64,000 nucleotides of DNA from Hemiscyllium ocellatum (taxonomy: Eukaryota). The position numbers were made by a program, and so were the translations under genes. Positions 2,046-52,969 of the stretch are shown in pieces. The notes beneath the pieces are model-generated. The model made no database searches. It was not told the origin of the DNA and saw only the letters and a list, made by a program, of their open reading frames with translations. The stretch is taken from assembly GCF_020745735.1 (NCBI RefSeq), contig NC_083424.1, positions 18,400,999-18,464,998 on the forward strand, in the 5' to 3' direction. Positions within the stretch are counted from its first letter, which is position 1. Every line of letters starts with the position of its first letter.

Positions 2046-2057
2046 CAATTTGACAAC

Positions 2058-13887: not shown

Positions 13888-14202
13888 TTTGACCGGACCG
13901 TATTTTTTTATCTCAGTGAGCAGGCAATCAGAGGCGAGCAGAGATGTGACGTTCAGTAACCGGCTCTGAGAATAAAGAGGAGGGCACCTGCAACACAGAC
14001 TCAGAGAGAGAGAGAGACCCAGAGGGGGCGCAGCCGGGAACCGGGCACTTACAGTGGGCACAGAGAGAGGGAGATCTGTTCACGTCTCCCATCCAGATCG
14101 GACACCGGCGTGAACAAAGCGGGGAAGACAAACTGCTGGGAAAGGAGTGTCGGAAACAAGTCAGTGTTTAACTTTCCCGGAGCGGAGCCTCCAGCGAGGA
14201 TT

Positions 14203-14865: not shown

Positions 14866-14877
14866 CAATTTGACAAC

Positions 14878-19156: not shown

Positions 19157-22100
19157 GTAGTTCTTCGTTATTTTGATTTAGTTGTTTCAAAGGCTGTATT
19201 TTTAAATTTACGCGCATTTTTTATTGTCTCTACTCAATGTCTTTTGGGTGGGGTTCTTCCTCCTGGGGCGGGTGGGGGGGGAATGCTGGGACTTTCTTGA
19301 ACAATCTTGGCTAGGCATTTGTCTAAACGGTGCACCTGGAATGTCAAGTGGAGGCACTGGCCAATTAAAAGGAAAAAGATGTTATCTTAAAAAAGAGAGG
19401 GTTGATGTAACCCTTTTATAGGAGACACAGCTACTCGATAAGGAGCATTCAAAGCTGCAGCAGGGAGGATTTGGTCAGGTGCTCTTTTCATCTTTTAGTT
19501 CAAAAAGTAGGGGAGTGGCCACATTATCTGGAAGAAGCTTCCCTTCCAAATGCTAAGCCAGATAAAAGATGAGTCTGGATGGGAGGGGAGTACGGGATTT
19601 TGAATGTATATTACTCCCCAGCACAGTCCTTTTAAATTTGTTACAGATGCGCTCTCCAAGTTGATGGCTCTCAGGGTACATCACATAATTATAGGAGGAG
19701 ATTTTAATTGTATTATCAATCCCGACGTGGACAGGATACCTAGGAGCTCTGTAGGTATATCTCTGAGATCTAGGCAGTTGGCTGATCTGAATATGGAGTT
19801 GGGGCTTGGAGATGTGTGGAGGTGTCTTCACCCTGAGGGTAGAGATTTTACTTTTTATTCTAACCCACACAAGTGTCATACTAGAATTGATTTTTTTTGT
19901 GTTCTTGACCTTTCTGAATTTGATATTGTCTTGTAAAATAGGGAATATAACTATTTCCAACCAGACAGCAGTGTATATGGAGGTCAAGACAAGTGATGAC
20001 AAGATGGGTTCCCAACATTGGCGACCCTTTCCGATAGTAAGTTCATAGAATATTTCTTGAAGGAATTTAAAACATTCTGGAGTATCAATTCAGGTATGGC
20101 CAGCAACCCACCGGTGATGTGGGAGACTGCTAAGGGCATATGCGTGTGGTTTGGTTATCTCATATTCTGCGACCCGGAAAAGACAAAAGGCTGAACTTCA
20201 GCGTCTGCTTGAGGCTCACCTGAAGGCAGCTGAGACAGCATATGTTGATAGACGATTCATTACTAAATTACAGTGGATTACAGCCCTCAGTGCTACTTTG
20301 AATACTGCACTTTCTCAAACAGCAAAGACGGAGATACTGTTTGCGAAGCAGAGATTATTTGAGTACGGCAATTAGCCGGGCAGGTATCTAGCATACCTTG
20401 CCAGAAAGAAAAAGGTTCCCCAATCCATTATGTCTATTAGAGAGGGTGCTGGTAACTTGACTTGTGATTCTAAAAAGATCAATGCAGCCTTTAGAAAGTT
20501 CTACTTCGAACTGTGTAAGTCGGAGGGCTGTGAGGATAGAGCGAGGAAGATGGAGTCTTTTTTTTAAAAACCTGGCCCTCTCGGCCTTAACCTCGGAACA
20601 AGTATTGCTTTTGAATGCTCCCCTGACAACCCAGGAAGTCCAGGAGGTGGTGAGGCAGCTCCAGAGCGGTAAAGCGCCCAGACCAGATGGATTCCAGGCT
20701 GAGTTCTATAAAGAATTCATAGATGAATTGGCCGGATCACTTATAGATACATGTAACTATTCTTATAGTCAGGGTTGCCTCCCGCCCTCCCTGAGAGAAG
20801 CTAATATCTCTCTCATTCTTAAAAATGTAAAAGCCCCAGATGACTGTATTTCGTGTACACCTATATCCTTATTGAATGTGGGCGTTTAAAATCCTCTCAA
20901 AAATGTTGGCATTAAGACTGGAGAGAATTTTACCATTTGTTATCCAAGAGGATCTAACGGGGTTTATTAAGGATCGCAGATCTACTAATAACATTAAAAG
21001 AGTGTTAAACATGATACCATCTGTCCAGCAGGGAGCAATACAGGGATTAGTCAACTTCCTGGATGCAGTGAAGGCATTCGATCGAGTAAGAATGGTCCTA
21101 TCTTTTTTATACTATGGAAAGGTTTGGCATTGGAGAGGTCTTTACCAAGTATGTTTCAGTATTATATAACGACCCTAAAGCAGCGGTGATTACCAACGGC
21201 ATAAGATTGGATAGTTTAGTGTTGGCAGAGGTTGTTGTCAAGGATGCCCTGTCTCACCATTCCTATTTACGCTAGTGATTGAGCTTCTGGCGGAAGCTAT
21301 CCAAACTGACCCTAATAACAGCCCCGAAGGTAGGATTGGGTAAGCATAAAATCACTCTTTATGCGGAAGATGTCCTTCTTTTTTTAAATGACCCATCGAT
21401 ATCTGTGACCCGCTTAATTCAAGGGGTTAACTTATTTGGTATGTCTCAGGTTACAAAATTAACTTTATGAAATCAGAGGCCATACCACTGGGAGGTCTTA
21501 CTAGCATATCCAATTTTCTGGATGAATCCTGTTTCCCCTTTCGGTGGTCACTGGGAGGTTTTCTCTTTAGGCATTTTGGTCAGCTATAAAAAGCTAATTA
21601 TACGCATTTATTAGGAAAAATAAGGCAAGACCTCCAACGCTGGGAAGATCTCCCGATATCCTGGATAGGAAGAACAGCTTTGGTCAAGATGAATATTCTA
21701 TCTCGCCTACTGTACCCCATGAGACTGTTTCCTTTGATGTTGCCGAGACAGGTGTTGCGTAAGCTTTATGGTTGGCTTGGATCCTTTATTTGGAATCATA
21801 GACGGCCCCTTATTAAATTAGAAAAGTTGCAGTTCTACAAGTAAGGGCGGGGGGGGGGGTGGGGTCTATATTTTCTGGATTTCAGGAAGTACCAACTGAG
21901 TTCTCTGTTTTCATATGTAGCTGATTGGGTCTCTTGTGACCTACAATCAATTTGGTTGGATATTGAGGCTTCCCAGTAAAATGCCCCCTCATCAATCTAT
22001 TATTTATGGATAAGATGAGAGTTATTACAGATCATTGTAAAAGTCCAGTTGTATTAAATACAATCAAAGCTTGGAGGATGATGCGACAGAATGAAGGTAA

Positions 22101-27711: not shown

Positions 27712-30700
27712 AATGTCCAGTGAAGTTATATGGGTGGAACTGAAAAATAGGACAGAGATGATAATCTTATTGGGATTGTACTATAGATTCCCCAATAGTC
27801 AGTGGGAAATTGAGAAGCAAATATGTAAGAATAACTCAAATATGTGTAGGAATAATGGGGGTTGTAATGTTGAGTATTTTAACTTTCTAAACAAAGATTG
27901 GGACTGCCACGATGATAAAGGTTTGGATGGAGAAAAATTTGCTAAATGTATACAAAAAAATAGTGGATGTGCCTATTAGAGAAGGAACAAAACATGACCT
28001 CTTGGGAAATAAGGCAGGGCAAGTGACTGAGGTGTTAGTGGGGGAACACTTTGAGGCAAGTATTTATAATTCAATTCGTTTTAAAATAGAAAGGGAAAGG
28101 ATAGATCTGATCTAAAAGTTAAAGCTCCAAATGGAAATAAGGCCAATTTTGATGGTATTAGGTAAGAACTTTCAAAGGTTGTTTGGGGGAGGCTGTTCAC
28201 AGGTAAAGGGATGGTTGGAAAGTGGGAGGCATTCAAAAGTAAGATCACAAGAGTTCAGAGCCAGTATGCTCCTGGTAGTGCAAAGGGCAAGGCTGGTAGG
28301 TGGAGGGAATGCTAGACGATGAGAAAAATTGAAACTGTGGTCACGAAAAAGGAGGACGCGCATGTCAGGTATAGACAGCTGGGATTGAGTGAATCCAAAG
28401 TGGAGTAAAAGGGTAGCAAGAAGAATACTTAAGAAGGAAATCAGGAGAGCAAAAAGGGGACATGAGATAGCTTTGCCAAATAGGGGTACAGAGAATCCAA
28501 AGAGATTCTACAAATATATTAAGGTCAAAGGAATAACTAGGGAGAGAATGGGGCCTCTTTAAGATCAATGAGGCTACCTATGCATGAAACTGCAGGATAT
28601 GGGTGAGATACGAAAAGAGTATTTTGCATCAGTATTTACTGTGTGGGAGAATATGGAAGCTAGGGAGCTCTAGGAAATAAATAGTGGCATCTTGAAAAGT
28701 GTCCATACTATAGAGCATAGAATGTTGCAGTGCAGTACAGGCCCTTCTGCCCTCAATGTTGCACTGATCTGTGAAATTAATCTGATGCCCATCTAACCTA
28801 CACCATCCCATTATTATCCATTTGTATGTCCAATGCCCATTTAAATGCCCTGAATATTGGCGAGTCTACTACTGTCGCAGGCAGGTCGTTCATGCCCCTT
28901 CTACTCTCTGAATGAAGAAACTACCCCTAATATTTGTCCGAAATCTATCACCCCTCAATTTAAACTATGTCCCTACGTGTTAGCCTTCACCATTTAAGGA
29001 AAAATGCTCTCACTGTCCACCCTATCTAACCCTCTGACTATGTTGTACACCTCAACTGAGTCACCTCTCAACCTTCTCTCCAGCGAAAACAGCCTCAGTT
29101 CCCTCAGCCTTTCCTTGTAAGATCTTCCTTCCATACCAGGCAACATCCTAGTATATTGCCTCTGAACCCTTTCCAAAGTTTCCACATCTTTCCTATAATG
29201 TGGTGACCAGAACTGTACGCAATACTCTCGGTGCGGCCTTAACGGTGCCTTGTACAGCTGAAGCGTGACCTTGTGGTTCCGAAACTCAATCCCCCTACCA
29301 ATAAACACCAACACACCATATGCCTTCTGAACAACTCTATCAACCTGGGTGGCAACTTTCAGGATTATGCACCAGAAGAGGAGCTGCTGGAGGTCTTAGA
29401 ATGCATAAAGCCCTGGGACCAGATCAGGTGCCAAGCAGTAGACATTGTCTATATGGACTTCAACAAAGTGTTTGACAAGGTTCTGCATGGTCGACTGGAT
29501 AGCAAGATTACTTCATATGGACTCTAGGGGGAGCTAGCCAATCAAGTACAAAACTGGTTTGAAGGTAGGAGACAGAGGGTGGTGGGAGAGGTTTGTTTTT
29601 TGGACTGGAGACCTGTGACCAGTGGTGTGATGCAAGGATCTGTGCTGGATCAACTGCTTTTTGTCATTATATAAATGACTTGGGTTGAATGGAGGAGACA
29701 TGGTTAGTAAGTTTGCAGAAGACATCAACATCGGTGGCATTGTAGACAGTGAAAAATGATATCTCAGAGTACATCAGAACCTTGAAAAGATGGTCGAATG
29801 GATTGAGGATTGATAGATGGAGTTTAATTTAGATAAATGAGAGGTGTTACATTTGGTAAGGCAAACCAGGCCAGGATTTATTCAGTTAATGGTACAGCCA
29901 TGGCGAACATTGCTGAACAAAGAGATGTAGGGGTGCAGGTGCCTTGTTCCTTGCAAGTGGAGTTGCAGGTAGACAGGGTAGCAAAGAAGGTATTTGGCAC
30001 GGTTGCCATCATTGGTGAATGCATTGAGTACAGGAATTGGGACATCATGCTGCAATAGTAAGGGACATTGGTAAGGTCACTTTCAGATTGCTGCATCCAA
30101 TTCTGGTTGCCCTTCTATAGGAAAGATGTCATTAAACTTGAAAGGTTTCAGAAAAACTTTTCAAGGATGTTGCTAGGATTCAAGGGTTGAGCTTGAACCT
30201 CATCTAGAGAGAGGCTGCATAGGGTGGGGCTGTTTTTCCCTGGAGCATCGGAAGCTATGGGATTATCTTGTAGAGGTTTATATAATCATGGCGGGCAAGA
30301 ATAGGGTGAAGAGAAAAGGTCTTTTCCCTAGGGTGGGAGAGTCCAGAACAAGAAGACATACATTTATAGTGAGAGGGGAATGATTTTAAATGGACCTGAA
30401 AGGCAGCATTTTCATGCAGAGGATAGTGCATGTATAGAATGAGCTGCCAGGAGAGGTGCCAGAGACTGACACATTCACAACATTCGAAAGACATCTAGAT
30501 TGGTACATGAATATGAAGTGTTTAGAAGGATATGGACCAAATGCTGGCAAATGAGGCTAGAATAGGTTAGGATATCTGGTCGGCGCATATAAGTTGGACA
30601 AAGGGTCTGTTCTGAAAATGTGTTGCTGGAAAAGCGCAGCAGGTCAGGCAGCATCCAAGGAACAGGAGATTTGACGTTTCGGGCATAAGCCCTTCTTCAG

Positions 30701-31165
30701 GAATGAGGAAAGTGCGTCCAGCAGGCTAAGATAAAAGGTAGGGAGGAGGGACTTGGGGGAGGGGCGTTGGAGATGCAATAGGTGGAAGGAGGTCAAGGTG
30801 AGGGTGATAGGCCGGAGTGGGGTGGGGGCGGAGAGGTCAGGAAGAAGATTGCAGGTTAGGAAGGCGGTGCTGAGTTCGAGGGATTTGTCTGAGACAAGGT
30901 GGGGGGAGGGGAAATGAGGAAACTGGAGAAATCTGAGTTCACCCCTTGTGGTTGGAGGGTTCCTAGGCTGAAGATGAGGCGCTCTTCCTCCAGCCGTCGT
31001 ATTGCTATGATCTGGCGATGGAGGAGTCCAAGGACCTGCATGTCCTTGGTGGAGTGGGAGAGGGATTTGAAGTGTTGAGCCACGGGGTGGTTAGGTTGTT
31101 TGGTCCGGGTGTCCCAGAGGTGTTCTGTTTCCATGTTGTATATCTCAATAACTCTGTGACTCTGT
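27712..31165 (+). mobile_element. Decayed CR1 ORF2 with a nested antisense CR1 (28706-29362) and a Penelope element (30612-31120)
   Basis: SSEVIWVEL...LGLYYR.PNS (EN), VDIVYMDFNKVFDKV.HGRL (RT) and 3' tail. The minus-strand insert reads RGIEFRNHKVTLQLYKAPLRPHREYCVQFWSPHY. Confidence 0.85.
30612..31120 (-). mobile_element. Penelope 3' fragment (same family as 5848-6858) with hammerhead motif at 30669-30704
   Basis: HPVAQHF...RRLEEERLIFSLGTLQPQGVN. Minus strand attcCTGAAGAagggcttatgcccGAAAcGTCaaat. Confidence 0.88.
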
Positions 31166-32819
31166 AACTTTCCTAGTAGTCCTTTAATGGCCACTTGGAT
31201 GATATAGGAGAATACTGCTGCACCAGTGAACCTTAACTCACCATCTCCTCACTGGCGAGAGTAAGCCTGGAGGTGAAATTAAAAGTATTGAACATACAAG
31301 AGTGAAAGACAAGGTAGACATGCAAGTGAATACACAGTGGAGATACGTCACTGTACTTGTTTCACAATTTGTTGCAGGAGCAGGGCTGGGAGCAGGTGTG
31401 ATCTTCACTATTGAGGTGCTGCTCAGGTGACAATCTGTTTATCGGTTCAGAAAGGAAGCCCCAGGGGCTGTCCAGAGAGTGCAGCAAGAAAACAATCCAA
31501 GCCCTACAATAACATCCGTAATCTTTTCAAACCTCTGGCCGTGAATTCAATGCCCTTGTTGAATCCCTTTGTCCTTGGTAAGTACAGTAAACATATCACA
31601 AATTGGGAAGTGTAAACACATCATTTGTCTACTTCTCAAACAGTCAGGATACTCAGCATTCTATAATATATAGAGATGTAGTCAGAACAGAAATCTCTAC
31701 ACCTACTTTGACAAAGAAAAGGATTTTTGAAAAGGTGGCTAAAAGCAAGTTGAAATCAGTAGCAGACTATTCTTTCTGATAAATATATCATACACAGGGG
31801 ATTCTAGCAGAAGTGAATCTTTAAACTTGATTTCATTGGATTAACGTGACAGCAGAGTATATTGGGATAACCAATCAGATTGTGTCAGGTATCAGATATT
31901 CTGATGTAACAAGGAAGGAGAGGAGAGGACTGCTGGAGATGTAGTGAGATAAAGAAGGGTAAACTTACTGTCAGAGAGAGGATTATTCGATGAGCAGAAA
32001 ATCAGAAACAAGGGAGTTGTACCAGAGGTAGTTTTACTCATTTATTAATCCAAATCTGAGACACTCTGTGAAAAGCAAAACAAAATACAAACTGCTCAAT
32101 GAGGTGATTCTGCAACGATTCTGCTGATCCACAGTTTCCTGGATTTGTGGTACTGGCAAAGACTGTGAGTTCGTTCTGTACTTTTGTATTAAACAAGTTG
32201 TTCTGAATTTCAGTAACAATTCACACAGGAGGAGGAGGAGGAGGCCATTCTCTCTGTGTCAGCTCTCTTTGATAGCAGCCAAACTAGCCCCTTGTTTTTG
32301 TAGATTTGCACATTTTTTTCACAACAGTTTTCAGAAAATCTTTTAATTCCCTTTTGAAACCCGTGACTGAATCTGCGTCAGCAACACTCAGGTGATGCAT
32401 TCCAAATGCTAAATGCTAAATGTAGATAAGTGTTTGCATATGTTGCGACTGATCCTTTTCAATGACTTTAAATTAGTATCCTCCATTTTATATTCGAGCA
32501 ATAGGAACAGCTTTTCCCTATTTATACTGTCCAGTTTGCTCACAATGTTGAAGACCTCTAGCAAATCACCTCTCACCCTTCTCTTCTATAAGCTTCAATC
32601 CTTTCTCCTAAGTGAACATTCTGATATCTTTAACCATCCTGTAAATCTCTTCTGCGCCATCTTTTAATGGTTCCACATTCTTCCTAAGTGCTGTGCCCAG
32701 AATTAAACATACCACTCAGTCAAGGCCAATCGTGTGTCGAATAAAGATTTACAATAACTTCTCAGGTTTGGGATTCTGTGCTTGGATTTATAAAGCCAAG
32801 GATCTCAGAAGCCTCATTG

Positions 32820-33160
32820 GGGTGGCACGGTGGCTTTGGGGCAGCATGGTGGCTCTGGGATGGCACGGTGTCTCAGTGGTTAGCACTGCTACCTCACAGT
32901 ACCAGGGGCCCGGGTTCGATTCCAGCCTTAGGTGACTGTCTGTGTGGAGTTTGCACATTCTCCCCATGTCTATGTGGATTTACTGTGGTTTCCTCTCACA
33001 GTCCAAAAGATGTGCAGGTCAGGTGAATTGGCCATGCTGAATTGCCCATAGTGTTAGGTGCATTAGTCAGAGGGAAGTGGGTCTGGATGGCTTACCCTTC
33101 GGTGGGTCGGTGTAGACTTGTTGGGCCGAAGGGCCTGTTTCCACACTGTAGGGAATCTAC
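32820..33160 (+). mobile_element. Shark SINE with a reiterated 5' head, within an old minus-strand CR1
   Basis: Three gg(t/c)(g/a)gca(c/t)ggtg(g)ct starts, then the standard SINE body and tail. Confidence 0.85.
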
Positions 33161-33459
33161 TTTCTCAATGTTTAAACATTTGAGTACATATACCTCTGCC
33201 CCTTTATTTTGTATCCTTTTTCAAAAGCTGTCTCTTCTCATTTTTCCCACCAAAATGAATCATTTCTGTGTTAAATTTCACTTGCTGCATAACCAACATT
33301 CCAGCAGCCTGTCTATGTTCTGTTGAAGTCTATCACTATTCTCCTCACAGTTCATCATTCTTCCAAATTTTGAGTGATTTACAAATTTTGAAATTATGCC
33401 CTGTAACCCAGATCCAGGTCACGAATGTAGACCAAGACAAGCAATGATTCTAATGTTCT

Positions 33460-33600: not shown

Positions 33601-35605
33601 ACCATGATATACCATCCTTCAGTCTGAAAAGCAGGCATTCATTATTACTGCCTGACTCCTGTCAGTCAGCCAGCTTATACCACAGTGCCAATGAAACACC
33701 AAATATTATTTCTGGATGTTTTTTGTTTTTTTTCCAATTATCTAAACTTTTCTGAAATATGTTGGTCATGCCAGTATAGATGTTAATTTTGTAAATTAAT
33801 GCAGTCATCTCCACCTTGCCTGTCTACTCAAGGACTCTGTTTTCAGTCTCCTGTTCCCTTACAATTTTTGTTCCAATTTCTTCCTTCCTCCTTTGCTGAC
33901 CCCTCTGCCATTTTCAGCGTATATCTCCAAAGCTCAGTGTCTTTGCTAACCAGTTGTAGATCAGACTGTGCTGTGAATGACAGAACAACCCTGGATCCAG
34001 CTGAACATTCATTCTTTCCAGCAAAGGTCTGCAGGATGAACCTTGCGCAATCTTACACATTACAAACAAGGCGATGTTGAATCTGAGTGTTGCCCATCTA
34101 TCGCTGACATGAAAACAGTAACTTCATCAATAATGTTCATGATTGCTTAAAAATCACCCTGAAGCAGAGAGCTCAAACAGAATCACATCTCATTTGGCAC
34201 TGGTTTGAAAAGCTTTTGTTATTAATTTAAAACTCAGTCAAGGAAGAGATATGGAAAGCATAGAGCAGGTGAGATACAAAAATAGAGAGGGGCCTAAACT
34301 GTCCCGTATCCCTGGAGAATTATCCATGAGATTGCATCTATCTATCTGTCCGACTCCAATGATAAGCAGGAACAAGGGAGTAGGCCTCAGAGAGATTCTG
34401 CAGATTGCCCTGAACCAATAACATAAACTATTCCTTCCATGGCTACAAATAAGGATGAAACAAAATAAACATAAGGTGAGCTACAAGGCAGTCAGTCATG
34501 CTAGGAATCCGCCAAGGGGCTAACTATCAACTACATCCCTAAGGAGAGCTACATGAAGATCTTGATGATATTACTGAAAGAAAAGCCAGTTGGTTGAGAT
34601 AATGTGAATGATGTTCCTGTGAATCATGTACGAGGTTGTGTTGGTGGTGTTTAGGATGGGTGTCTAGTGAGCATGAAAACAGAATATACTGTTTGAAGGT
34701 CTCATTGAGCAGAGAATTAACTGGTGTTTATGTGGTTGAGAACTGAGAACAGGTTTTTAATCAGATTTTTGTGCGTTAAGTGGAATTACCGATCTGAAAA
34801 TTTGGTGGAGGCTCATTACACTGTGCATCTTTCTTTTCTCTTCCTACTTGATTTGTTAAGGGTGTTAGAGAATTTGATTTTGTGTTATCACTTGGGTTTG
34901 CTGGCGCCTCAATTTTTCTATTGGTGGATTTTCTGCCAGTAGCTTCCAAAGTGCTGTATTGGATTTTCCATGAGTGTGCCCTGCAGCCGTGCTTTTTGGA
35001 GGAAGGAGACAGGACCAATGAAGGAAGGTCAGACAGATCCTACTGAGTGTACCTACAGCACATACAAATGGGCTAAAGATGGATGTTATGTCCTGGTAGA
35101 TCTATTAATGTAAGACTGACTGAAGTATTCAGAGAGATCTATGAATTAAAAGCAACATAACTTCAAATGGTGGAAATCAGAGACTACAAAGCAGCTGGCA
35201 GCATATCACATGTCAGGATAACTGGAATCGATTGGAATTGTTAAAAATTATGAAAGGGTAAATATTGAAAGATTATTTTAATTTATCAGCTGATGGTAAC
35301 AACCAGAGGATAAGTTCTTCTCAGAAGAGGAAAGGAGGAAGATAGAAATATTTTTATTTGAAGTACAGATGTAATTGAAGCCAAATTAATCATAGCACTT
35401 CAAAGCAAATTTGATCAACATTCGAAGAAGAAAAACATTAAAAGCTAAAGAAATGTTAAAATAATGGGCTGAGTGGTCTTTATTTTTTAATCTATAAAAA
35501 TAACTCTTGATTGAAAAGGTAACTGTCATTTTCTCTCCAGATTTAGGAGCCAAAGGCTATTGAGCACTTGGATACAAAGAAAATTGAAGCTAAGTTGAGT
35601 AGACT

Positions 35606-36124
35606 ATGGGCAACAGTGCAAGTGATAACTTTAGCGACTTTGAGGAATTTGACTTTGGCACCAGCGAAGACGATCTAATCAATGATGTTTCGGCAAGTTT
35701 TGGTGATTTAGACACAAATGAATACCTGGAACAATATGGAGCAATCATTTATTTATATATTGTTGGGGAGGCAAAGACATCCTTTTACAAAATTGGCCAC
35801 ACGATTTGCCCCCAGCGAAAACGAGCAAAACTTCAAGTTGGAAATCCTCGTAAACTTATTTACAAGAGTGTCCTGAAATTACAATTATTGAAGAAGAAAC
35901 GGGGAGACTTTTTCAAGCTGAAGGATTTGGCTGAGCATATTGAAGCTGAAATCACTAAGGAGCTGGTAGATTTCAGTTGTGAATATGAACAATGCAGTAA
36001 ATGGTTTGAGTTCAGTGCAGCAACCAAACCCATTTTGTATGACATTTTCAAAACAAAAGTTTACAATATTGTTAATCTGAACAAAGACTGGGTCACTGTA
36101 GAACCTGTTCCTAAGAAACGCTGA
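35606..36124 (+). CDS. Uncharacterised T5orf172/MUG113-type GIY-YIG domain protein with N-myristoylation-like and acidic N-terminus (172 aa)
   Basis: Motifs YLYIVG...YKIGHT..P......LQVGNP..L...AEHIEAEI...KWF. Unbroken ORF, strong Kozak (actATGG), in-frame TAG at 35600, clean acceptor cattttctctccAG ending at 35540. Confidence 0.75.
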   Translation: MGNSASDNFSDFEEFDFGTSEDDLINDVSASFGDLDTNEYLEQYGAIIYLYIVGEAKTSFYKIGHTICPQRKRAKLQVGNPRKLIYKSVLKLQLLKKKRGDFFKLKDLAEHIEAEITKELVDFSCEYEQCSKWFEFSAATKPILYDIFKTKVYNIVNLNKDWVTVEPVPKKR

Positions 36125-36840: not shown

Positions 36841-37749
36841 AAAGTGGGGTAGCACACGACCCTTAATTTTCATAAGTGAAATCCTGAGGGAATTTGTAGA
36901 AATAAGTGTTGCAGGGGCATTAGTGAAGTGTTGACAAAGTTGAGAAAGTTTCCAATGTGTTTCAGAAATCCTATTCACAGCAAGTGAGCTGGAAATAATG
37001 AGTTTGCCTTTAAGTTGATGTCCACATCAATATCATGCTTGCTCCCAAATAGGTGGTCACTGTTAAGAGGGAGCATACGGATAAATGGTAGCTACTAAAA
37101 TTTCATGTGATTCCAGTGCTAGCAAGAATTTTAAACTGCAATGAATCTCTTCATGAGTCTCTGGACAGCTGTCCCTAGTATAGGTTTTCATCTCCTTTAT
37201 TGAGTTGGCATCTTGTGTTAAACATGGGCTGAACCTACATTTTAGCTCAAGATATCATCTTGAACAGCCACAATAATCAACAACATCTGCATTTACTGCA
37301 GGAAATCACCCTCATTATGTTTAACTGCTTAGCCAGAGAAGTTAAGATTAAGCAAAGATTAAATCTACTTCCTACTCGGGTTATTGTTTAGGTACTCATT
37401 GGTGGAACTGCTGTTAAAAACTTGTATTAGTGAGATTCTAATTGCTGAGGGAAGTTTCTGTGGATTACGAGCTGCTTTTAGCTTTAAAGTTCCTGCTCTT
37501 TGTAGAAACTAAGTTATGCTCAGAAAGAAAAAAACACAAATGACTTCCTTTCTTTCTAAATTAAAAGTGATAATTTGAACTGTAAAATCTAAGACGTGGG
37601 GGAGCTTGTTAGCTATGTTTAGATGATTCTTTTTACATTAACATCAAATGAATTTCCATCACAAATACCAATTGGGCAGAGCTGGCAAGATACTCATTGA
37701 GACAGTGATTAAGAAACTTGACAGTGTCTTATTATCAAATGCTAAACAA

Positions 37750-38060
37750 GGGGACGGCATGGTGGCTCAGTGGTTAGCACTGCTGCCTTACAGTCCATCC
37801 TCGGGCGACTGTCTGTGTGGAGTTTGCACATTTGCCCTATGTCTGTGTGGGTTTGTTCCGGTTTCCTCCCACAGTCCAAAGATATGCAGGTCAGGTCAAT
37901 TGGCCATGCTAAATTGCCCATAGAGATGTGTAGTTTAGGTGCATTAGTCAGGGCAAATATAGGATAGAGGAATATGTCTGGGAGAGTTACTCTTTGGAGG
38001 TTGGTGTGGACTTGTTGGGCCAAAGGGCCTGTTTCCACACTGTAGGGATTCTAATTCTAA
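37750..38060 (+). mobile_element. Shark SINE
   Basis: ggcatggtggctcagtggttagcactgctgcct head through gggcctgtttccacactgtagggattcta tail. Confidence 0.88.
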
Positions 38061-47969: not shown

Positions 47970-49045
47970 GCAATCGCGCGAAACTAATAGGTCATCTCAT
48001 GGGCTATTTGAGGTGGCTGAAATGGACTCAGAGAATCACTTGAGGAAGAAGCGAAGACAAGCTGAAAGCAGGAAATGGCTAAGATGGGAGAACCAAGAAT
48101 GAAATAGGACAAACCAAGGAGGGAATTCTGGAATTGCTTCGGAAAAGAAGCCGAGTTCCTGGTGGTGATTGTCTGGAAAACGAAACGCCCCTCGGCTGTT
48201 GTGATCGTTCGGGAATGGCCGGAATGCTGAAGGTGTCGCTGTTCTGTGAGTGGCGGGGACGGGGATGGGAGGAAGATGTTTAAAATCAGGCAGAGAATCA
48301 CCAAAACCGAACAGCAAGAGGGCAGGGCGGCAAAGCTGAACCAGCCCAGCTCTATCTGACTGTCTCTCCGGAGCCGAGATTTCCGAAGGATGGGCTACAG
48401 GGAATCGTGTGCGCTGTGCTGGGCAGAATTCTGGGATTATGAAACTCCCAAAGTTGTGGTGGTTAAAAACCGAACTTTAGGAATAATTTACAGAATTATC
48501 CAACTACTTATCATTTTATACTTTGCTGTGTAAGTACATCCCAGAGTTGAGGCTATGTTGGGGCGAATACATGAATTATTAATTAATTAATTAATACATT
48601 AATTCCAAGATACCACACAATGTTTATTTTGCCTCCATGAGTTTGATTTTTGAATCGTCGGTTTTGAGATTGTGTGTGGAGGCAATTAACGATTGGTTTG
48701 ATATGTTTTCTTAAACCGAAGCCTGCGTTAAACTTGTCACTGAATAATTTCAAATCCTCGCCAATTGCAGGAGGTGTTTCTCGATTTCTGATTTCTTTAA
48801 CACTTTCTCAAACCGGATTGACTTTCAGAATCCAGGGTCTCTGCTGTTTCAACTCCGGGAGCCGAGTGTCGGCTCTTTGTAAACTTCGGGATTAATAGTA
48901 ACGTTCAAGGTTTTTACGCGAGCATGTGTAGTTCAGGATAAATATTTGGATTTCGTGAGCTTCAACCCCCCCCCCCAAAAAAAAGTATCAAAGCGAAATC
49001 TCGTTCTGTTTAAAAAGAATCGCGTCGGCTCCTGTGAAGCGTGTG
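47970..49045 (+). promoter_or_regulatory. CpG-enriched promoter/first-exon region of P2RX2
   Basis: Visibly higher CpG density than the flanks; GC boxes ggcgggg/ggggcg at about 48252 and 48325; not recognisably a repeat. Confidence 0.6.
48390..48529 (+). CDS. P2RX2: P2X purinoceptor 2, coding exon 1
   Basis: [46 protein letters not shown](V) has the WDYETPKV signature of P2X2 plus TM1; phase-2 donor GTAAGT at 48530. Confidence 0.93.
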
Positions 49046-49178
49046 AAATATTGCCAACAGGCTGGAGTAGAAAGCTTTTCTGATGCTCTGATTTGGAGAT
49101 GCCGGTGTTGGACTGGGGTGTACAAAGTTAAAAATCACACAACACCAGGTTATAGTCCAACAGGTTAAATTGGAAGCA

Positions 49179-49213
49179 CACTAGCTTTCGGAGCGATGCT
49201 CCTTCATCAGGTG
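49179..49213 (-). ncRNA. Hammerhead ribozyme motif (left arm of the Penelope fold-back)
   Basis: Minus strand CAC-CTGATGA-A-GGAGC atc GCTCC-GAAA-GCTA-GTG. Confidence 0.7.
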
Positions 49214-51302
49214 ATTGTGGAGGGCTCGATCGTAACACAGAATTTATAGCGAAAATTTACAGCGTGATGTAATTGAAATTATACATTTGAAAATTGATTG
49301 TCTGTTAAGCCTTTCATCTGTTAGAATACAGTGATAGTTTCACTTTCATATGTAAATCACAAAACCTTTCTTTTTAAAGTTGCATTATCGGGTTAGCTGC
49401 TAACAATGGTGATAGCTAGACAATATGTTGAAGGTGTTAGCCCCCTGTGTTCTCTGTCTATGACCTGACGTTTAGATTGATTCTAATCTAAAAAATGAGA
49501 TAACAGAGTTTTACATAAATTCATGCAGTTTTTGAGCTCAGGGTTCTACATGAATGTATGCAGTTTTTGAGCAAAGTACAATGTAACCCTGAAAGTACAA
49601 ATTCACCACACAGAATATATGTGTGCATGTAGGTCTTTGTCTGTCTGTGTGTGTGTGTGTGTGTCTGTCTGGGGTGGGGTTTGTGAGTGTGAGAAAGTGT
49701 GTGTGTGTGTATGTGTGTGTAGTGAGTGCAGAGTGTCAAGTCTGTGAGGGGGTGCATGTGTGAGTATGGGAGTGTATGTGTCTATGAAGGTGTGTGTGGA
49801 TGTCTGTGTGCGTGTCTGTGTGTACCTGTGTCCTTGTGTATGTGAGAGAGTGTGTGTGTGTGTGTGTAGGAATATCTGTGTGTGTGTGTGTGTGTGTAGT
49901 GCAATGGTGATCACCTGTAATGTGACATGAACCCAAAGTCCCGGTTGAGGCCCTCCCTATGGGTACCGAACTTAGCTATCAGCCTCTGCTCAGCCACTTT
50001 TCTTTGCTGCCTGTCCCGAAGTCCACCTTGGAGGATGGTCACCCGAAGGTCCGCGGCTGAATGTCCTGGACCACTGAAATGTTCCCCCAACTGGGAGGGA
50101 ACCCTCCTGTCTGTTGATTGTTGTGAGGTGCCCATTCATCCGTTGTTATAGCCTTTGTCCCATGTACCATGCCTCCGGGCATCCTTGCCTGCAACGTATA
50201 AGATAGACAACGTTGGCTGAGTCACATGAGTACCTGCCATGTACAAGGTGGGGGGTGTTCCCACGCGTAATAGTGGTATCTATGTCCACACTCTGACATG
50301 TCTTGCAGCATCCACTGTGACAGGACTGTAACACCGTAACACCCTGAGAGCCGGGTAGTTTGCTACGAACAATGATCTGTTTGAGGTTTGGCGGTGTTTA
50401 AAGGCAAGTAGTGGAGGTGTGGGGAAGGTCTTGGTGCGGTGCTTATCCTCATTGGTAATATGTTGCAGGTCAACTGGTGTTGACCACCAGTTCCGACGTG
50501 CCACAGCAAGGAACCGTAATTACCTCCTCAGGAGACAGACAGGTGCAGCAACTGACAGGGTACCCTTCGTTGTTTAGTACTTCCCAGGGGCTGAAAAATT
50601 GTGCCGTGTTCTTCGTGGCCTGCAACACATTATCAATGAGGATGAGCACCTCAACAAGACCTTTCCCACACCTCCACTACTTGCCTTTAAACAACCGCTA
50701 AACTTCGGACACACAGATGCAGGTACACACAGACACGCACACAGACACCCACACACACCCTAATAGACACACACACTCCCACACTCCCACATGCACCCCC
50801 TCACAGACTTAAGACACTCTGCACTCACTACACATACACACACACTTTCTCACATTCACAACCACGACCCTAGACAGACACACACACACATGCAAACATA
50901 TGTTGTGTGGTGAATTTGTACTTGCAGAGTTACATTGTACTTTGCTCAAAAACTGCATGCATTCGTGTAGAACTCAGCTCAAAAACTGCATGAATTTATG
51001 TAAAACTCTGTTATCTCATTTTTTAGATTAGAATCAATCTAAACATCAGGTCTTAGACAGAGAACACATGGGGCTAACACCTTCAACATATTGTCTAGCT
51101 ATCACCATTGTTAGCAGCTAATCCGAGAATGCAACTTTTTAAAAAGGTATTTGTGATTTACACATGAAAGAAGTGAAACTATCACTGTATTTTAACAGAT
51201 GAAAGGCTTAACAGACAATCAATTTTTCAATGTATAATTTCAGTGATATCACACTGTAAATTTATGCTATAAATTCTGTGTTACGATCGAGTCCTCCACT
51301 AT

Positions 51303-51337
51303 CACCTGATGAAGGAGCGTCGCTCTGAAAGCTAGTG
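51303..51337 (+). ncRNA. Hammerhead ribozyme motif (right arm; sense to P2RX2 pre-mRNA)
   Basis: CAC-CTGATGA-A-GGAGC gtc GCTCT-GAAA-GCTA-GTG. Confidence 0.7.
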
Positions 51338-52969
51338 TGCTTCCAATTAAACCTGTTGGACTATTACCTGGTGTTGTGTGATTTTTTAGTTCTGATGCTA
51401 GATCACATTAGGCAGAGCTTGTTTTTTCACACCTAAGACAGAGTAACCTTGGTCAAAATGGTAAATCTCTGCAAACACAAACTAACCATCTGGACGGGTA
51501 TATGAATAGGAAAGATTTAGAGTGGTGTGGGCCTGGATCAGATTGAGATGTCTGGTCAGCATGGATTAGTTAGACGGAAGGATCTGTATGTTTCTGAACT
51601 CTGACTCTAATTGCAGCTTGTTCGATTTACCACAAAGTAGCTACTTCTATTGGGCATTGCTTGATAAGGCATGGCCAGTTTTAATTTGGCTAATATTTTT
51701 ATTTCCCATTTTGCTATCACAATTTTCTACAACCGGACTGTGAAGGTGTAGTGGAGTTTAAAATCCAGCCAAGAGTTTGAATAAATTGTGGGAGTTACAT
51801 ATTTATGGAGCCACTTATTTATATTCAGCTTCTGCCAAACTCATCATAATGAACAGAATGTAAGGTACCTGTGTCTGATAGTTCTTGGCAACAGTCCTGT
51901 CAATACCATTACTTCTCTGTATTCTGCTTTTGATCTCCCCTACATTGAAAGCACGGTTTTGTACCACCACCCTATTCACTGTCTCAAAGACTTTTTTGAT
52001 CCAATCCCCAGTCTTCACACTATTGAAGGAAACAGTCCTTGCCTGTTAAGGTCCCTTAGTAAACTTGAAAAGTTAGAACTGGTATCATCATTGTCTTTTC
52101 TGTTTTTACACATTCTCCAGTATGTCAATACCTTTTTATATGATGCAAAGACTAGAGCTATGCACAGTACTGTGTGGTCAAATCAAGATTCCATGCAAGT
52201 GTGCAAAATGTCTCTGTTTTTTAACTCTTTCCTTCAGAAGAAATAACTCCCAGAGTTCAGTTTACCTTTTTAAAACATTTTTCCAACCTATTTGTCTATT
52301 TCCCTAAAAAATATTTGCACTATTACCCTATTTGAATACTTACAGCATCTTGGATGTGTTAAAATATCCCAAGACACTTCGCTAAATAACAGAAAAATAA
52401 TTGCTATTTATGTATGAATATGTGTTACTGATTGAAGGTTTCGAGGTGCAGAGGTGAGGAAAGTGGTAGTGGAACCAGCAAATAAAAGAGAAAATGTGTG
52501 TTTAATGCAGGTAAAACTGACAGCACTTTGATTTCTGCAGTGCAATCGCACCAAAGTCATGCATTAACAACTTCAAAGATTGGTTTTAAAATGGGTTAGG
52601 AGCCCTCGCACAGTTGCAGCTGTTTTTGATTAATGGGCAGCTTATTGACAATCTATCAATCGGTCATTATAACCAGCAATTGGCCATCATCGTTTCTAGC
52701 AACATTAACAGGGATGCTAGTTGCTCATTATATAATGTATTAGATGTTTTATATTAGTTATTTTTTAAACCAAACTCAATGTTTTTAGTTCAGCTGTGAA
52801 AAGTTCTGATTTTTTTAAAAAGGGTTTCTGACAATGTTTCTTCATGTCTGTGCAACAATTGAGCAGGAGGAGGGGGGACAGTAGAAGCATGGTGGAAACA
52901 AAGATATAGCTGCATAGAGAGAAAATAGGCAGAGGCAAACTTCTAGGATTCGTTAAGCTTCCAGCAGAG

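What the first reader, a model, noticed from the sequence alone, without database searches (positions are those of the whole stretch)
35606..35773. MGNSAS myristoylation motif and acidic leader fused to a basic nuclease fold: possible membrane-tethered, auto-inhibited effector
Seen: the N-terminus fits MGxxxS, and the upstream in-frame TAG means Gly2 is at the real start of this exon's ORF. Residues 7-42 contain 13 D/E and several Phe, with no K/R before K57, while the domain is very basic (RKRAK, KKKR, C-terminal PKKR). Inference: a eukaryote-specific addition that could anchor the protein to membranes and mask the nucleic-acid-binding face. Cleavage in the Asp-rich linker could release an NLS-bearing domain, and FGDL in an acidic context is LIR-like. 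These mechanisms are speculative.
Basis: partly seen in the sequence, partly recalled or inferred. Interest (0 to 1): 0.7.

Follow-up and report, generated by a model that had tools for sequence, protein, structure and literature searches.

The report
Shark T5orf172-like protein with myristoylation-type leader
A small, selectively constrained shark gene encodes a very divergent phage-type (T5orf172, GIY-YIG-like) DNA-binding fold behind a disordered acidic leader. The leader's first 17 residues, including a myristoylation-type MGNxxS start, are conserved, but the nuclease, membrane-anchor and autophagy-motif ideas are unproven or contradicted.

Summary
Window 35606-36124 (+) is a 172-codon ORF starting MGNSAS. 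An in-frame TAG lies two codons upstream. Residues 7-42 hold 13 D/E, and there is no K/R before K57.

It is a real gene of a Chiloscyllium-like shark. It is 98% identical to a C. punctatum protein, 72% to a catshark model and 60% to a 172-aa orthologue of unknown species. dN/dS is about 0.11.

Residues 46-168 fold confidently as a T5orf172/MUG113 domain of the GIY-YIG superfamily. The clade sits on a long branch. It keeps both tyrosines and the glutamate that aligns with catalytic E180 of phage ICP1 Odn. The catalytic arginine column is K/Q/Q and the family's GGGTEWF motif is gone, so nuclease activity is doubtful.

The leader is predicted disordered. Residues 1-17 are the best-conserved stretch (14/17 identical at 60% overall identity, with synonymous sites saturated), which fits N-myristoylation or a binding motif.

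Against a stable membrane tether: D7 is suboptimal for the transferase, and there is no basic patch or cysteine near the N-terminus.

The FGDL "LIR" and RKRAK are not conserved. The C-terminal VPKKR is invariant. AlphaFold weakly suggests a contact between the N-terminal and C-terminal ends.

Verdict: partly supported, and of moderate interest.

The parts
35606..36124 (+). Complete coding sequence (172 codons plus TGA) of the MGN-leader T5orf172-like protein, all in one exon
   Evidence: ORF list. 98% identical to C. punctatum chiPu_0015273, 72% to an S. torazame model and 60% to P0003. dN/dS is 0.11 against L001 and 0.10 against L003.
35539..35540 (+). Candidate splice acceptor AG after a polypyrimidine tract. 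The exon would start at 35541, giving a 65-nt 5' UTR with no upstream ATG.
   Evidence: Sequence. The same tract plus AG is kept 50-60 nt upstream of the ATG in the 60%-identical locus L001. Inferred; no transcript data.
35600..35602 (+). In-frame TAG two codons upstream of the start codon
   Evidence: L001 also has an in-frame stop, four codons upstream of its ATG.
35606..35626 (+). MGNSASD: N-myristoylation-type consensus (G2, N3, S6, then D7)
   Evidence: Fits PROSITE PS00008. G2, N3, S6 and D7 are identical in C. punctatum and in P0003/P0015/P0016. D7 replaces the basic residue preferred by NMT.
35606..35656 (+). Residues 1-17 (MGNSASDNFSDFEEFDF): conserved acidic-aromatic N-terminal motif
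   Evidence: 14/17 residues identical to the 60% orthologue. pN is 0.068 with synonymous sites saturated. Residues 14-17 are the only part of leader residues 1-35 with pLDDT of 50 or more, and there is an isolated beta-bridge at residue 15 in both models.
35657..35710 (+). Residues 18-35: variable, acidic, Ser-rich disordered linker, which contains the non-conserved FGDL
   Evidence: 7/18 residues identical to P0003. pN for residues 18-45 is 0.38 and pLDDT is below 50. FGDL is replaced by SLEL or AYDL.
35711..35740 (+). Residues 36-45: short helix (37-44) leading into the domain
   Evidence: AlphaFold helix 37-44 in both models. The L-D-x-x-E-[YF]-L-[ED]-Q motif is conserved.
35741..36109 (+). 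Residues 46-168: T5orf172/MUG113-type domain (GIY-YIG superfamily fold)
   Evidence: Pfam PF10544 at E = 0.003 and 18.5 bits, below the cut-off of 20. An exhaustive profile search reaches only T5orf172/MUG113 proteins. pLDDT is 80-94. Foldseek top viral hits are T5orf172, BRO and GIY-YIG proteins at E about 1e-5 with probability 1.0. The best PDB hit is Slx1.
35819..35821 (+). K72 codon: the column of the conserved (catalytic) Arg of GIY-YIG/T5orf172 domains
   Evidence: The column is R in all ten paralogues aligned, and K/Q/Q in the MGN clade. It aligns with R148 of ICP1 Odn and with the PERRL Arg of UPF0213 protein 1ywl.
35942..35944 (+). E113 codon: equivalent of the catalytic Glu (ICP1 Odn E180, I-TevI E75), retained
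   Evidence: hhalign of A2 against Odn. Residue numbering checked. E180A abolishes Odn cleavage (PMC8263062). The column is nearly invariant.
35897..35941 (+). Residues 98-112: clade-specific basic insertion of about 15 residues that lengthens the loop and helix before E113
   Evidence: Gap in all paralogues in alignment A2. Residues 95-107, which overlap it, are 10/13 identical to P0003.
35990..36010 (+). Residues 129-135 (QCSKWFE): degenerate version of the family's GGGTEWF motif
   Evidence: Alignment A2 shows CSKWF, SGNWF and VTNWF against GGGTEWF in the paralogues.
36107..36121 (+). Residues 168-172 (VPKKR-COOH): invariant basic C-terminal tail
   Evidence: Invariant in all orthologues. 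An isolated beta-bridge at residue 170 appears in both AlphaFold models.
32061..32144 (+). Candidate non-coding 5' exon (weak evidence); a GTGAGT donor lies at 32165
   Evidence: The first 27 aa of the S. torazame model match this stretch (14/28, E = 0.03 within the window), but the window has a stop inside it. Inferred and unverified.
37358..37363 (+). First polyadenylation-type hexamer (ATTAAA) downstream of the stop codon
   Evidence: Pattern scan. Others lie at 37560, 38571 and 38787. Usage unknown.

Best explanation
This is a genuine, lineage-restricted elasmobranch gene with a single coding exon behind a short spliced 5' UTR. It encodes a 20-kDa protein with two modules.

Module 1 (residues 46-168) is a highly diverged T5orf172/MUG113 domain, which belongs to the GIY-YIG superfamily. 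It has kept the fold, both tyrosines and the active-site glutamate. It has lost the conserved arginine and the GGGTEWF motif, and it has gained a basic insertion. I read it as a nucleic-acid-binding module that is non-catalytic, or at best weakly catalytic.

Module 2 (residues 1-45) is an intrinsically disordered, strongly acidic leader. Its first 17 residues (MGNxxSDNFSDF-E/D-EFDF) are under strong protein-level constraint.

The most likely working model has three steps:
1. Met1 is removed and Gly2 is N-myristoylated.
2. The lipid gives only weak, reversible or partner-dependent targeting. It acts as a switch rather than a stable anchor, because there is no second membrane signal and the neighbouring sequence is acidic.
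3. The acidic-aromatic leader folds back onto the basic domain and the invariant C-terminal VPKKR, competing with nucleic acid.

Shown: the gene is real and constrained, the fold, the residue pattern, the conservation profile of the leader, and its predicted disorder.
Inferred: myristoylation, fold-back, nucleic-acid binding and any biological role.
For: Gene reality and constraint:
- Orthologues at 98%, 72% and 60% identity.
- dN/dS is 0.11 (window against L001) and 0.10 (window against C. punctatum L003).
- The CDS is 98.1% identical to L003 against a flank average of about 95.4%.
- It is a single copy in the window, flanked by dispersed SINE copies.

Fold and family:
- Pfam T5orf172 at 18.5 bits.
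- An exhaustive HMMER search of 1.84 billion representatives returns only T5orf172/MUG113 proteins.
- AlphaFold pLDDT is 80-94 for residues 46-168.
- The Foldseek viral library gives T5orf172, BRO and GIY-YIG proteins at E about 1e-5. The best PDB hit is Slx1.

Active-site reading:
- E113 aligns with Odn E180, which is required for cleavage (PMC8263062).
- The Arg column is K/Q/Q.
- The clade sits on a long stem branch of 1.58 substitutions per site with 100% support.

Leader:
- G2, N3 and S6 are conserved, and 14/17 residues are identical in positions 1-17 with synonymous sites saturated.
- The ATG is the first in the exon, preceded by an in-frame stop, in both lineages.
- pLDDT is below 50 for residues 1-13 and 18-35.
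- The leader has net charge -13 and the domain +11.
- Isolated beta-bridges at residues 15 and 170 recur in both models.
- The nearest relatives also carry short acidic leaders, so acidity goes with this sub-family.
Against: - There are no transcript, proteomic or biochemical data. Myristoylation is inferred from a motif expected by chance in about 1% of proteins.
- D7 and N8 replace the basic residues that favour NMT, where K7 forms a salt bridge with the enzyme's acidic Ab-loop.
- The conserved N-terminus could equally be a protein-binding motif. G2 could be held by the Kozak +4 G, by N-terminal acetylation or by a Gly-degron.
- The fold-back contact rests on two low-confidence (pLDDT about 50) models built from largely the same alignment. 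I could not inspect coordinates or PAE.
- Loss of the Arg does not prove inactivity. R71 and R73 flank the column in two of the three lineages, and atypical GIY-YIG sites exist.
- Only three orthologue lineages are available. The catshark model lacks the MGN N-terminus.
- No RefSeq model of this gene turned up in other annotated sharks.
Confidence: 0.45

Rival explanations
1. The protein is a stably membrane-tethered, auto-inhibited active nuclease effector. Cleavage in the Asp-rich linker releases an NLS-bearing catalytic domain, and an LIR links it to autophagy.
For: - MGNxxS is conserved.
- The fold is GIY-YIG-like and keeps both Tyr and the Glu equivalent E113.
- T5orf172 domains can be true nucleases, as shown for ICP1 Odn (PMC8263062).
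- The leader and the domain carry opposite charge.
- VPKKR is invariant.
Against: - The catalytic Arg column is K/Q/Q, and the 60% orthologue has no Arg anywhere in that helix.
- GGGTEWF is lost.
- There is no K/R before residue 57 and no Cys before residue 68, so no second membrane signal exists. The flank is acidic.
- FGDL is not conserved, and neither is RKRAK.
- No conserved protease site was seen in the linker, which is the least conserved part of the protein.
Confidence: 0.12
2. The leader is not lipidated. Residues 1-17 are an acidic-aromatic short linear motif, either an acidic activation domain or an adaptor- or partner-binding peptide, attached to a DNA-binding T5orf172 module. The protein would then work as a small regulator that binds DNA or RNA, comparable to domesticated non-cutting relatives of T5orf172 homing endonucleases. 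Gly2 would be conserved for other reasons (Kozak +4 G, N-terminal acetylation or stability).
For: - The whole stretch of residues 7-17, and not only residues 2-6, is conserved.
- D7 and N8 are unfavourable for NMT.
- T5orf172 was first described as a DNA-binding domain associated with Bro-N/KilA-N regulators. The phage satellite PLE protein CapR is a domesticated, DNA-binding relative of the N-terminal domain of T5orf172-type homing endonucleases (PMC8096241).
- The Arg column is lost.
- The nearest relatives have acidic leaders without MG.
Against: - N3 and S6 are invariant at 60% overall identity although the Kozak context does not require them.
- Within 131 family proteins fetched, the pattern occurs only in this clade and in two unrelated sequences.
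- From my own recollection, not tested here: bona fide NMT substrates with MGNxxS followed by D or E exist, namely the AMPK beta subunits.
Confidence: 0.28
3. The N-terminus seen here is not the one used in vivo. Transcripts would join upstream exons to an internal acceptor and replace roughly the first 25 residues, as in the S. torazame model.
For: - The S. torazame GenBank model is a partial, multi-exon model spanning 8.9 kb with a different N-terminus.
- Its first 27 aa resemble window 32061-32144.
Against: - That window stretch contains a stop codon, so it is probably a non-coding 5' exon that was read through in a 5'-partial model.
- Part of the model's N-terminus resembles the 5' UTR of the window's coding exon read in another frame.
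- C. punctatum, from the same genome project, was modelled as the 172-aa single-exon protein.
- Codons 1-17 show strong protein-level constraint, which an unused region would not show.
Confidence: 0.1
4. The ORF is not a functional host gene. It would be a decaying remnant of a virus or mobile element, or a chance ORF.
For: - T5orf172 domains are typical of phages, giant viruses, polinton-like viruses and BRO proteins.
- The Pfam score is below the cut-off.
- There are no RefSeq models in other sharks.
- The region is rich in SINE and LINE elements.
Against: - The ORF is intact at exactly 172 codons in lineages that are 60% identical, with dN/dS about 0.11.
- The upstream acceptor is conserved.
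- It lies in a collinear position in C. punctatum.
- No terminal repeats enclose it. The flanking SINE copies are ordinary dispersed copies.
Confidence: 0.03

Closest known systems
T5orf172 / MUG113 domain proteins (Pfam PF10544, PF13455; GIY-YIG clan), e.g. phage T5 Orf172, baculovirus and ascovirus BRO C-terminal domains, S. pombe Mug113
   Same: - Same fold order: beta-beta-alpha-beta-alpha, then further strands and a helix.
- Shared motifs: Y-x-Y, F-Y-K-[IV]-G, Q-x-G-N-P-R-K-L, the helix glutamate, and W-F.
- Best structural matches are to this family.
   Different: - The score is below the Pfam cut-off (18.5 against 20), and the 60% orthologue gets no Pfam hit at all.
- The conserved Arg and GGGTEWF are lost.
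- There is an insertion of about 15 residues before the Glu helix.
- The clade sits on a long stem branch.
- It has a vertebrate host and a unique 45-residue leader with MGNxxS.
Phage ICP1 Odn (Gp88), an experimentally proven T5orf172-domain nuclease
   Same: The T5orf172 domain aligns over the two Tyr strands, the Arg helix and the Glu helix. Odn E180 corresponds to E113 here (PMC8263062).
   Different: - Odn keeps the catalytic Arg, and takes its specificity from a separate RepA_N DNA-binding domain.
- The shark protein has K/Q/Q at the Arg column and no separate DNA-binding domain. It has an acidic disordered leader instead.
Small single-domain T5orf172/MUG113 proteins P0004, P0006, P0021 and P0022 (120-130 aa). 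P0006 comes from total brain DNA of the sturgeon Huso huso.
   Same: - Nearest neighbours in the tree (SH-aLRT 88).
- They share the G-N-P-R-K-L-I-[FY]-K motif and the I-L-Y-D helix.
- They have a short Ser- and Asp/Glu-rich N-terminal leader.
   Different: - They keep P-x-x-R and GGGTEWF and lack the insertion.
- Their leaders are about 20 residues long and start MS or MA, not MG.
- They have no VPKKR tail.
Tandem-domain T5orf172/MUG113 proteins of sharks (Scyliorhinus torazame, S. canicula, Mustelus asterias 'uncharacterized protein LOC...')
   Same: Same domain family and same host group. They show that elasmobranch genomes carry an expanded set of these domains.
   Different: They fall outside the clade that holds the MGN group in the tree. 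They have two to four domains per protein with canonical motifs, and no MGN leader.
N-myristoylated proteins with a myristoyl switch (recoverin, Arf and AMPK beta type; from general knowledge)
   Same: An M-G-N-x-x-S N-terminus at a true translation start. There is no adjacent basic patch or palmitoylatable Cys, so any lipid would act as a weak, conditional anchor.
   Different: Modification is untested here. No known lipid-binding pocket or partner is apparent. The sequence following the motif is unusually acidic.
Nucleic-acid-binding proteins auto-inhibited by an acidic disordered tail (HMGB1 type; from general knowledge)
   Same: A D/E-rich disordered segment and a basic binding module in the same chain, with net charge -13 against +11.
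   Different: No homology. Here the acidic segment is N-terminal and carries a strictly conserved aromatic motif. The contact is only hinted at by low-confidence models.

Membership tests
T5orf172 / MUG113 domain family (Pfam PF10544, PF13455) | Score at or above the Pfam gathering threshold | tested here: not met
   PF10544 scores 18.5 bits against a cut-off of 20 (E = 0.003) for the window protein. Orthologue P0003 has no Pfam hit.
T5orf172 / MUG113 domain family (Pfam PF10544, PF13455) | Significant profile-level homology to proteins that do pass the thresholds | tested here: met
   The orthologue profile A1 finds P0004-P0014 at E between 1.5e-11 and 6.5e-4 across 1.84 billion representatives. 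All of the nine scanned pass PF10544 and/or PF13455.
T5orf172 / MUG113 domain family (Pfam PF10544, PF13455) | Same three-dimensional fold | tested here: met
   AlphaFold pLDDT is 80-94 over residues 46-168. 59 BFVD matches have E at or below 1e-3, and the top ones are annotated T5orf172, BRO, MUG113 or GIY-YIG.
T5orf172 / MUG113 domain family (Pfam PF10544, PF13455) | Family signature motifs (P-x-x-R on helix 1; GGGTEWF) | tested here: not met
   Position 72 is K/Q/Q. The second motif reads CSKWF, SGNWF or VTNWF.
Catalytically competent GIY-YIG nucleases | The two motif tyrosines on strands 1 and 2 | tested here: met
   Y51 and Y61 are invariant, and Y49 is also kept.
Catalytically competent GIY-YIG nucleases | Conserved Arg at the start of helix 1 (I-TevI R27 equivalent) | tested here: not met
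   The column aligned with Odn R148 and with the PERRL of 1ywl is K (Chiloscyllium), Q (Scyliorhinus) and Q (P0003 group).
Catalytically competent GIY-YIG nucleases | Catalytic Glu on helix 2 (I-TevI E75, Odn E180) | tested here: met
   E113 aligns with Odn E180 by hhalign and is kept in all orthologues.
Catalytically competent GIY-YIG nucleases | Metal-dependent cleavage of nucleic acid | not testable with these tools
   Needs purified protein.
N-myristoyltransferase substrates | Gly2 at the true translation start | tested here: met
   It is the first ATG of the exon, with A at -3 and G at +4 and an in-frame stop upstream. The same holds in the 60% orthologue's locus.
N-myristoyltransferase substrates | Permissive residue 3, Ser/Thr-type residue 6, and no Pro at 7 (PROSITE PS00008), conserved in orthologues | tested here: met
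   MGNSAS-D, MGNNAS-D and MGNNVS-D.
N-myristoyltransferase substrates | Basic residue at position 7 or 8 that enhances catalysis | tested here: not met
   D7 and N8 in all orthologues. K7 is reported to form a salt bridge with the NMT Ab-loop (bioRxiv 10.1101/2021.06.22.449375). This is an enhancer, not an absolute requirement.
N-myristoyltransferase substrates | Covalent myristate on Gly2 | not testable with these tools
   Needs metabolic labelling or mass spectrometry.
Stable myristoyl membrane anchors (myristate plus basic patch, or myristate plus palmitate) | A second membrane signal next to Gly2 | tested here: not met
   There is no K/R before residue 57 and no Cys before residue 68. Residues 1-45 hold 13 D/E.
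LIR (Atg8/LC3-interacting) motifs | Core [W/F/Y]-x-x-[L/I/V] kept in orthologues | tested here: not met
   F-G-D-L occurs in Chiloscyllium only. It is S-L-E-L in the P0003 group and A-Y-D-L in S. torazame.
Acidic-tail auto-inhibited nucleic-acid binders (HMGB1-like logic) | An oppositely charged disordered segment and a basic binding module in the same chain | tested here: met
   Net charge is -13 for residues 1-45 and +11 for residues 46-172. pLDDT is below 50 for most of the leader.
Acidic-tail auto-inhibited nucleic-acid binders (HMGB1-like logic) | Intramolecular contact that competes with nucleic acid | tested here: inconclusive
   Both AlphaFold models show isolated beta-bridges at residues 15 and 170 and pLDDT of 50 or more only around residues 14-18 of the leader. 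Confidence is low, and no coordinates or PAE were available.

The most novel reading that the evidence does not exclude
A T5orf172 (GIY-YIG-like) gene of viral or mobile-element origin was domesticated in cartilaginous fishes. It was rebuilt into a lipid-switched, self-masked nucleic-acid sensor or effector. A myristoylated acidic-aromatic leader would hold the basic domain and its VPKKR tail closed until a trigger, such as foreign nucleic acid, a membrane or a partner, releases it. Its position about 20 kb downstream of two ISRE-bearing ISG15 genes would then reflect a role in innate immunity. This would be a vertebrate defence protein built on a phage-type nuclease fold.
Probability: 0.07. 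Interest if true: 0.75.

Novelty: new variant of a known kind. Interest (0 to 1): 0.4.

Why it matters
T5orf172/MUG113 domains are known from phages, giant viruses, baculovirus BRO proteins, bacteria and fungi. I found no paper in the searchable library that treats them in vertebrates.

This work shows three things:
- Elasmobranch genomes carry a family of these domains.
- One branch has been remodelled: it lost the Arg, gained an insertion and gained a new conserved leader.
- That branch has been kept under purifying selection for a long time.

This is a clean case of a mobile-element-type nuclease fold being recruited and probably made non-catalytic in a vertebrate. The conserved MGNxxS start offers a directly testable handle on localisation. 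If the lipid switch and self-masking are real, it would be a compact model for how an acidic disordered leader regulates a basic binding domain.

If not, it remains an ordinary lineage-specific gene of unknown role. Nothing here bears on a long-standing open question, so the interest is moderate.

Tried and rejected
- **GGGTEWF as the catalytic Glu.** I first took the Glu of the family's GGGTEWF motif to be the catalytic one, which would have made the shark protein doubly dead. The hhalign against ICP1 Odn showed that catalytic E180 aligns with E113, which is kept. I corrected this.
- **LIR reading of FGDL.** Rejected, because it is not conserved.
- **NLS reading of RKRAK.** Rejected as a conserved feature. 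KKKR is only partly kept, as KKKQ or KNKR.
- **Interferon regulation.** No GAAANNGAAA element lies between 28.1 and 40.8 kb. The canonical ISREs sit upstream of the two ISG15 genes at 77 and 13802. The element at 31997 has a 4-nt spacer.
- **Gene carried by a transposon.** The only flanking repeats are two dispersed tRNA-derived SINE copies, 84-91% alike, with no terminal repeats around the gene.
- **Extra copies in the window.** None found.
- **More orthologues.** Two word-indexed searches and one exhaustive profile search gave only three orthologue clusters.
- **Organism of the 60% orthologue.** The runs are SRR089296 and SRR17051962/3. The accession searches in the paper library failed.
- **S. 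torazame DNA.** Not obtainable because the file is too large.
- **PADLOC, NCBIfam and PHROGs.** Nothing useful.
- **Phylogenetic footprinting against C. punctatum.** The species are too close, at about 95% identity, to resolve a promoter or a first exon.
- **Literature check for the N-terminal peptide strings.** No hits.
- **Known short linear motifs in residues 7-25** (FFAT, FxDxF, acidic dileucine, caspase sites). I considered these by eye and found no convincing, conserved match. They were not formally scored.
Full report
**1. The observation**

The ORF at 35606-36124 (+) encodes 172 residues starting MGNSASD.
- TAG at 35600-35602 is in frame, two codons upstream of the ATG.
- A polypyrimidine tract ends in AG at 35539-35540.
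- No other ATG lies between 35541 and the start codon. The context is A at -3 and G at +4.
- Residues 7-42 hold 13 D/E. Residues 1-45 have no K/R, and the first K/R is K57.
- The leader has net charge -13. Residues 46-172 have net charge +11.

A myristoylation-type N-terminus is expected by chance in about 1% of proteins, so its meaning depends on conservation.

**2. Where the sequence comes from, and whether the gene is real**

The protein is 98% identical to hypothetical protein chiPu_0015273 of the bamboo shark Chiloscyllium punctatum. It is 72% identical to a partial model from the catshark Scyliorhinus torazame. It is 60% identical to a 172-aa protein assembled from three sequencing runs of an organism I could not identify.
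- The C. punctatum locus (L003) is collinear with window 25.5-46 kb at roughly 93-95% nucleotide identity. The window is therefore a close sister species.
- Nei-Gojobori dN/dS is 0.11 against the 60% orthologue, with synonymous sites near saturation. It is 0.10 against C. punctatum.
- The 958-bp contig of the 60% orthologue is genomic. It keeps a polypyrimidine tract plus AG at the same distance upstream of its ATG, has no upstream ATG in that stretch, and has an in-frame stop four codons upstream.

This is a protein-coding gene under purifying selection, with its coding sequence in one exon behind a short spliced 5' UTR. No transcript data were available.

**3. The domain**

- Pfam gives only a sub-threshold T5orf172 match: 18.5 bits against a cut-off of 20.
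- An exhaustive HMMER search of 1.84 billion representatives with the orthologue profile found just 12 proteins. Apart from the orthologue cluster itself, every one of the nine I scanned is a T5orf172/MUG113 protein. The named ones are uncharacterised proteins of sharks (S. torazame, S. canicula, Mustelus asterias), several with two to four tandem domains.
- AlphaFold models residues 46-168 with pLDDT 80-94.
- The best matches in the viral structure library are T5orf172, MUG113, BRO and GIY-YIG proteins of phages, giant viruses and baculoviruses (E about 1e-5, probability 1.0). The best solved structure is the GIY-YIG nuclease Slx1, which is a weak match at E = 0.14.

The fold assignment is secure.

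**4. Is it a nuclease?**

A T5orf172 domain can be a true nuclease. ICP1 Odn (Gp88) cleaves DNA, and E180A abolishes cleavage (PMC8263062). I fetched Odn and aligned it to the family profile.
- E180 aligns with E113 of the shark protein. That column is nearly invariant and is kept in all orthologues.
- The conserved Arg (Odn R148, and the PERRL Arg of the UPF0213 GIY-YIG protein 1ywl) aligns with position 72. All ten aligned paralogues have R there. The MGN clade has K (Chiloscyllium), Q (Scyliorhinus) and Q (the 60% orthologue). The last of these has no Arg anywhere in that helix.
- The family's GGGTEWF motif has become CSKWF, SGNWF or VTNWF.
- A basic insertion of about 15 residues precedes the Glu helix.
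- In a tree of 83 domains the clade has 100% support and a stem of 1.58 substitutions per site, which indicates a burst of change.

I conclude that canonical GIY-YIG catalysis is doubtful, at perhaps 20-25% likely. The domain is more probably a binding module. I had first misassigned the catalytic Glu to the GGGTEWF motif, and the Odn alignment corrected that.

**5. The leader**

Both AlphaFold runs give pLDDT below 50 for residues 1-13 and for about 18-35, with a short helix at 37-44. One run used the window protein as target and the other used the 60% orthologue.

Conservation is uneven:
- Residues 1-17 are 14/17 identical between lineages that are 60% identical overall. pN is 0.068 and all synonymous sites have changed.
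- Residues 18-45 are 12/28 identical (Fisher p = 0.01). They stay acidic, with 13-14 D/E and 0-2 K/R.

G2, N3, S6 and D7 are identical in all readable orthologues. Among the 131 family proteins fetched, the N-terminal pattern occurs only in this clade and in two unrelated sequences. The nearest relatives in the tree are P0004, P0006, P0021 and P0022. P0006 comes from total DNA of sturgeon brain (PMC7602020). These relatives have leaders of about 20 residues, rich in Ser and Asp/Glu, that start MS or MA. An acidic leader therefore predates the clade, while the MG start and the NFSDFEEFDF extension are new to it.

**6. What the leader probably does**

The conserved MGNxxS at a verified start is what an N-myristoyltransferase substrate looks like.
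- Position 7 is Asp in every orthologue. A Lys there promotes catalysis through a salt bridge with the enzyme's acidic loop. From memory only, and not tested here, the AMPK beta subunits are accepted substrates with MGNxxS followed by D or E, so this is a handicap and not a bar.
- There is no second membrane signal. There is no basic residue before position 57 and no cysteine before position 68, and the flank would be repelled by acidic membranes. From general knowledge, a single myristate gives only weak, reversible binding. A switch or a partner-dependent role is therefore more plausible than a stable anchor.

The strict conservation of residues 7-17 also points to a specific contact and not to generic charge. 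Both AlphaFold models show isolated beta-bridges at residue 15 and residue 170, and raise pLDDT to 50 or more only around residues 14-18. This is compatible with the acidic-aromatic motif lying against the invariant C-terminal VPKKR. It is a weak hint: confidence is low, the two runs share most of their alignment, and neither coordinates nor PAE were available.

**7. Parts of the interpretation that fail**

- FGDL is not conserved (SLEL, AYDL), so the LIR idea is rejected.
- RKRAK is not conserved. KKKR is partly kept. Only VPKKR is invariant.
- Nothing supports proteolytic release. The linker is the least conserved part of the protein.

**8. The catshark model**

The S. torazame entry is a partial model spanning 8.9 kb whose N-terminus differs.
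- Its first 27 residues resemble window 32061-32144, where the window has a stop codon. That stretch is probably a non-coding 5' exon that was read through, and a GTGAGT donor lies at 32165.
- The next residues resemble the 5' UTR of the coding exon read in another frame.

I think this is an annotation artefact.

**9. Surroundings**

- Two ISG15-type genes lie upstream. They are 157 aa tandem ubiquitin-like proteins ending LRLRGG, at 2058-2531 and 14878-15351. They lie in a duplicated segment, each with GAAAGTGAAAC upstream, at 77 and at 13802.
- No canonical ISRE lies near the candidate 5' end of the MGN gene, so I make no claim of interferon control.
- Two dispersed tRNA-derived SINE copies flank the gene, and LINE reverse-transcriptase remnants lie elsewhere in the window.
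- Nothing indicates that the gene rides on a mobile element.

**10. Verdict**

The object is a new variant of a known domain family: a remodelled T5orf172/MUG113 domain in elasmobranchs that is probably non-catalytic, with a conserved, probably myristoylated, acidic-aromatic leader.

| Claim | My estimate |
|---|---|
| Real, constrained gene | about 0.95 |
| Fold assignment | about 0.95 |
| Myristoylated in vivo | about 0.5 |
| Active nuclease | about 0.2 |
| Leader folds back on the domain or tail | about 0.35 |
| Stable membrane tether | about 0.1 |
| LIR | below 0.05 |

No step had to be referred.

Noticed in passing
window 2058-2531 (+) and 14878-15351 (+); ISRE-like GAAAGTGAAAC at 77-87 and 13802-13812: Two near-identical ISG15-type genes (157 aa, two ubiquitin-like domains, C-terminal LRLRGG followed by SL). 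Each has a canonical ISRE 1-2 kb upstream. They match solved ISG15 structures over their full length (E about 1e-25).
   Followed up: partly
window 2-746 / 13727-14489 and 1688-3031 / 14508-15840: A segmental duplication (93.5-95.8% identity) carries the ISG15 genes. Copy 1 has about 940 bp extra between promoter and coding sequence.
   Followed up: partly
window 32819-33162 and 37751-38056: Two same-orientation copies of a tRNA-derived SINE (84-91% alike) flank the MGN gene 4.9 kb apart. They look like ordinary dispersed copies and not element termini.
   Followed up: partly
window 55486-57609 (-); also 7385-7867 (+) and 20464-20889 (+): A 707-aa LINE-type reverse-transcriptase ORF (RVT_1, E = 1.7e-34) and shorter RT-like or LINE-like fragments.
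   Followed up: partly
window 49130-49828 and 50720-51386 (inverted, 88%); GAAAGTGAAAC at 49337-49347 (-) and GAAAACGAAAC at 48176-48186 (+): An inverted repeat pair of about 700 bp next to two more ISRE-like elements and a CA-rich simple repeat. No gene was recognised there.
   Followed up: no
window 6311-6824 and 30612-31126 (inverted, 88.8%): A dispersed repeat copy shared between the ISG15 region and the region upstream of the MGN gene.
   Followed up: no
proteins P0005, P0020, P0009, P0010, P0012, P0017-P0019 (S. torazame, S. canicula, Mustelus asterias): Sharks carry an apparently undescribed expansion of canonical T5orf172/MUG113 proteins, often with two to four tandem domains. At least two such genes with consecutive locus numbers lie on one M. 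asterias contig.
   Followed up: partly
L005 (SRR12532268, Huso huso brain total DNA) 203-565; L007-L010 (SRR33006160-68): Small single-domain relatives with short acidic leaders occur in a sturgeon DNA library and in an unidentified sample series. The sub-family may therefore be wider among jawed fishes than sharks.
   Followed up: partly
window 31997-32017 and 34361-34381: A 21-nt direct repeat (GAAAATCAGAAACAAGGGAGT and a variant of it). The first copy lies just upstream of the candidate 5' exon. It is IRF-like, but with a 4-nt spacer instead of the 2-nt spacer of an ISRE.
   Followed up: no
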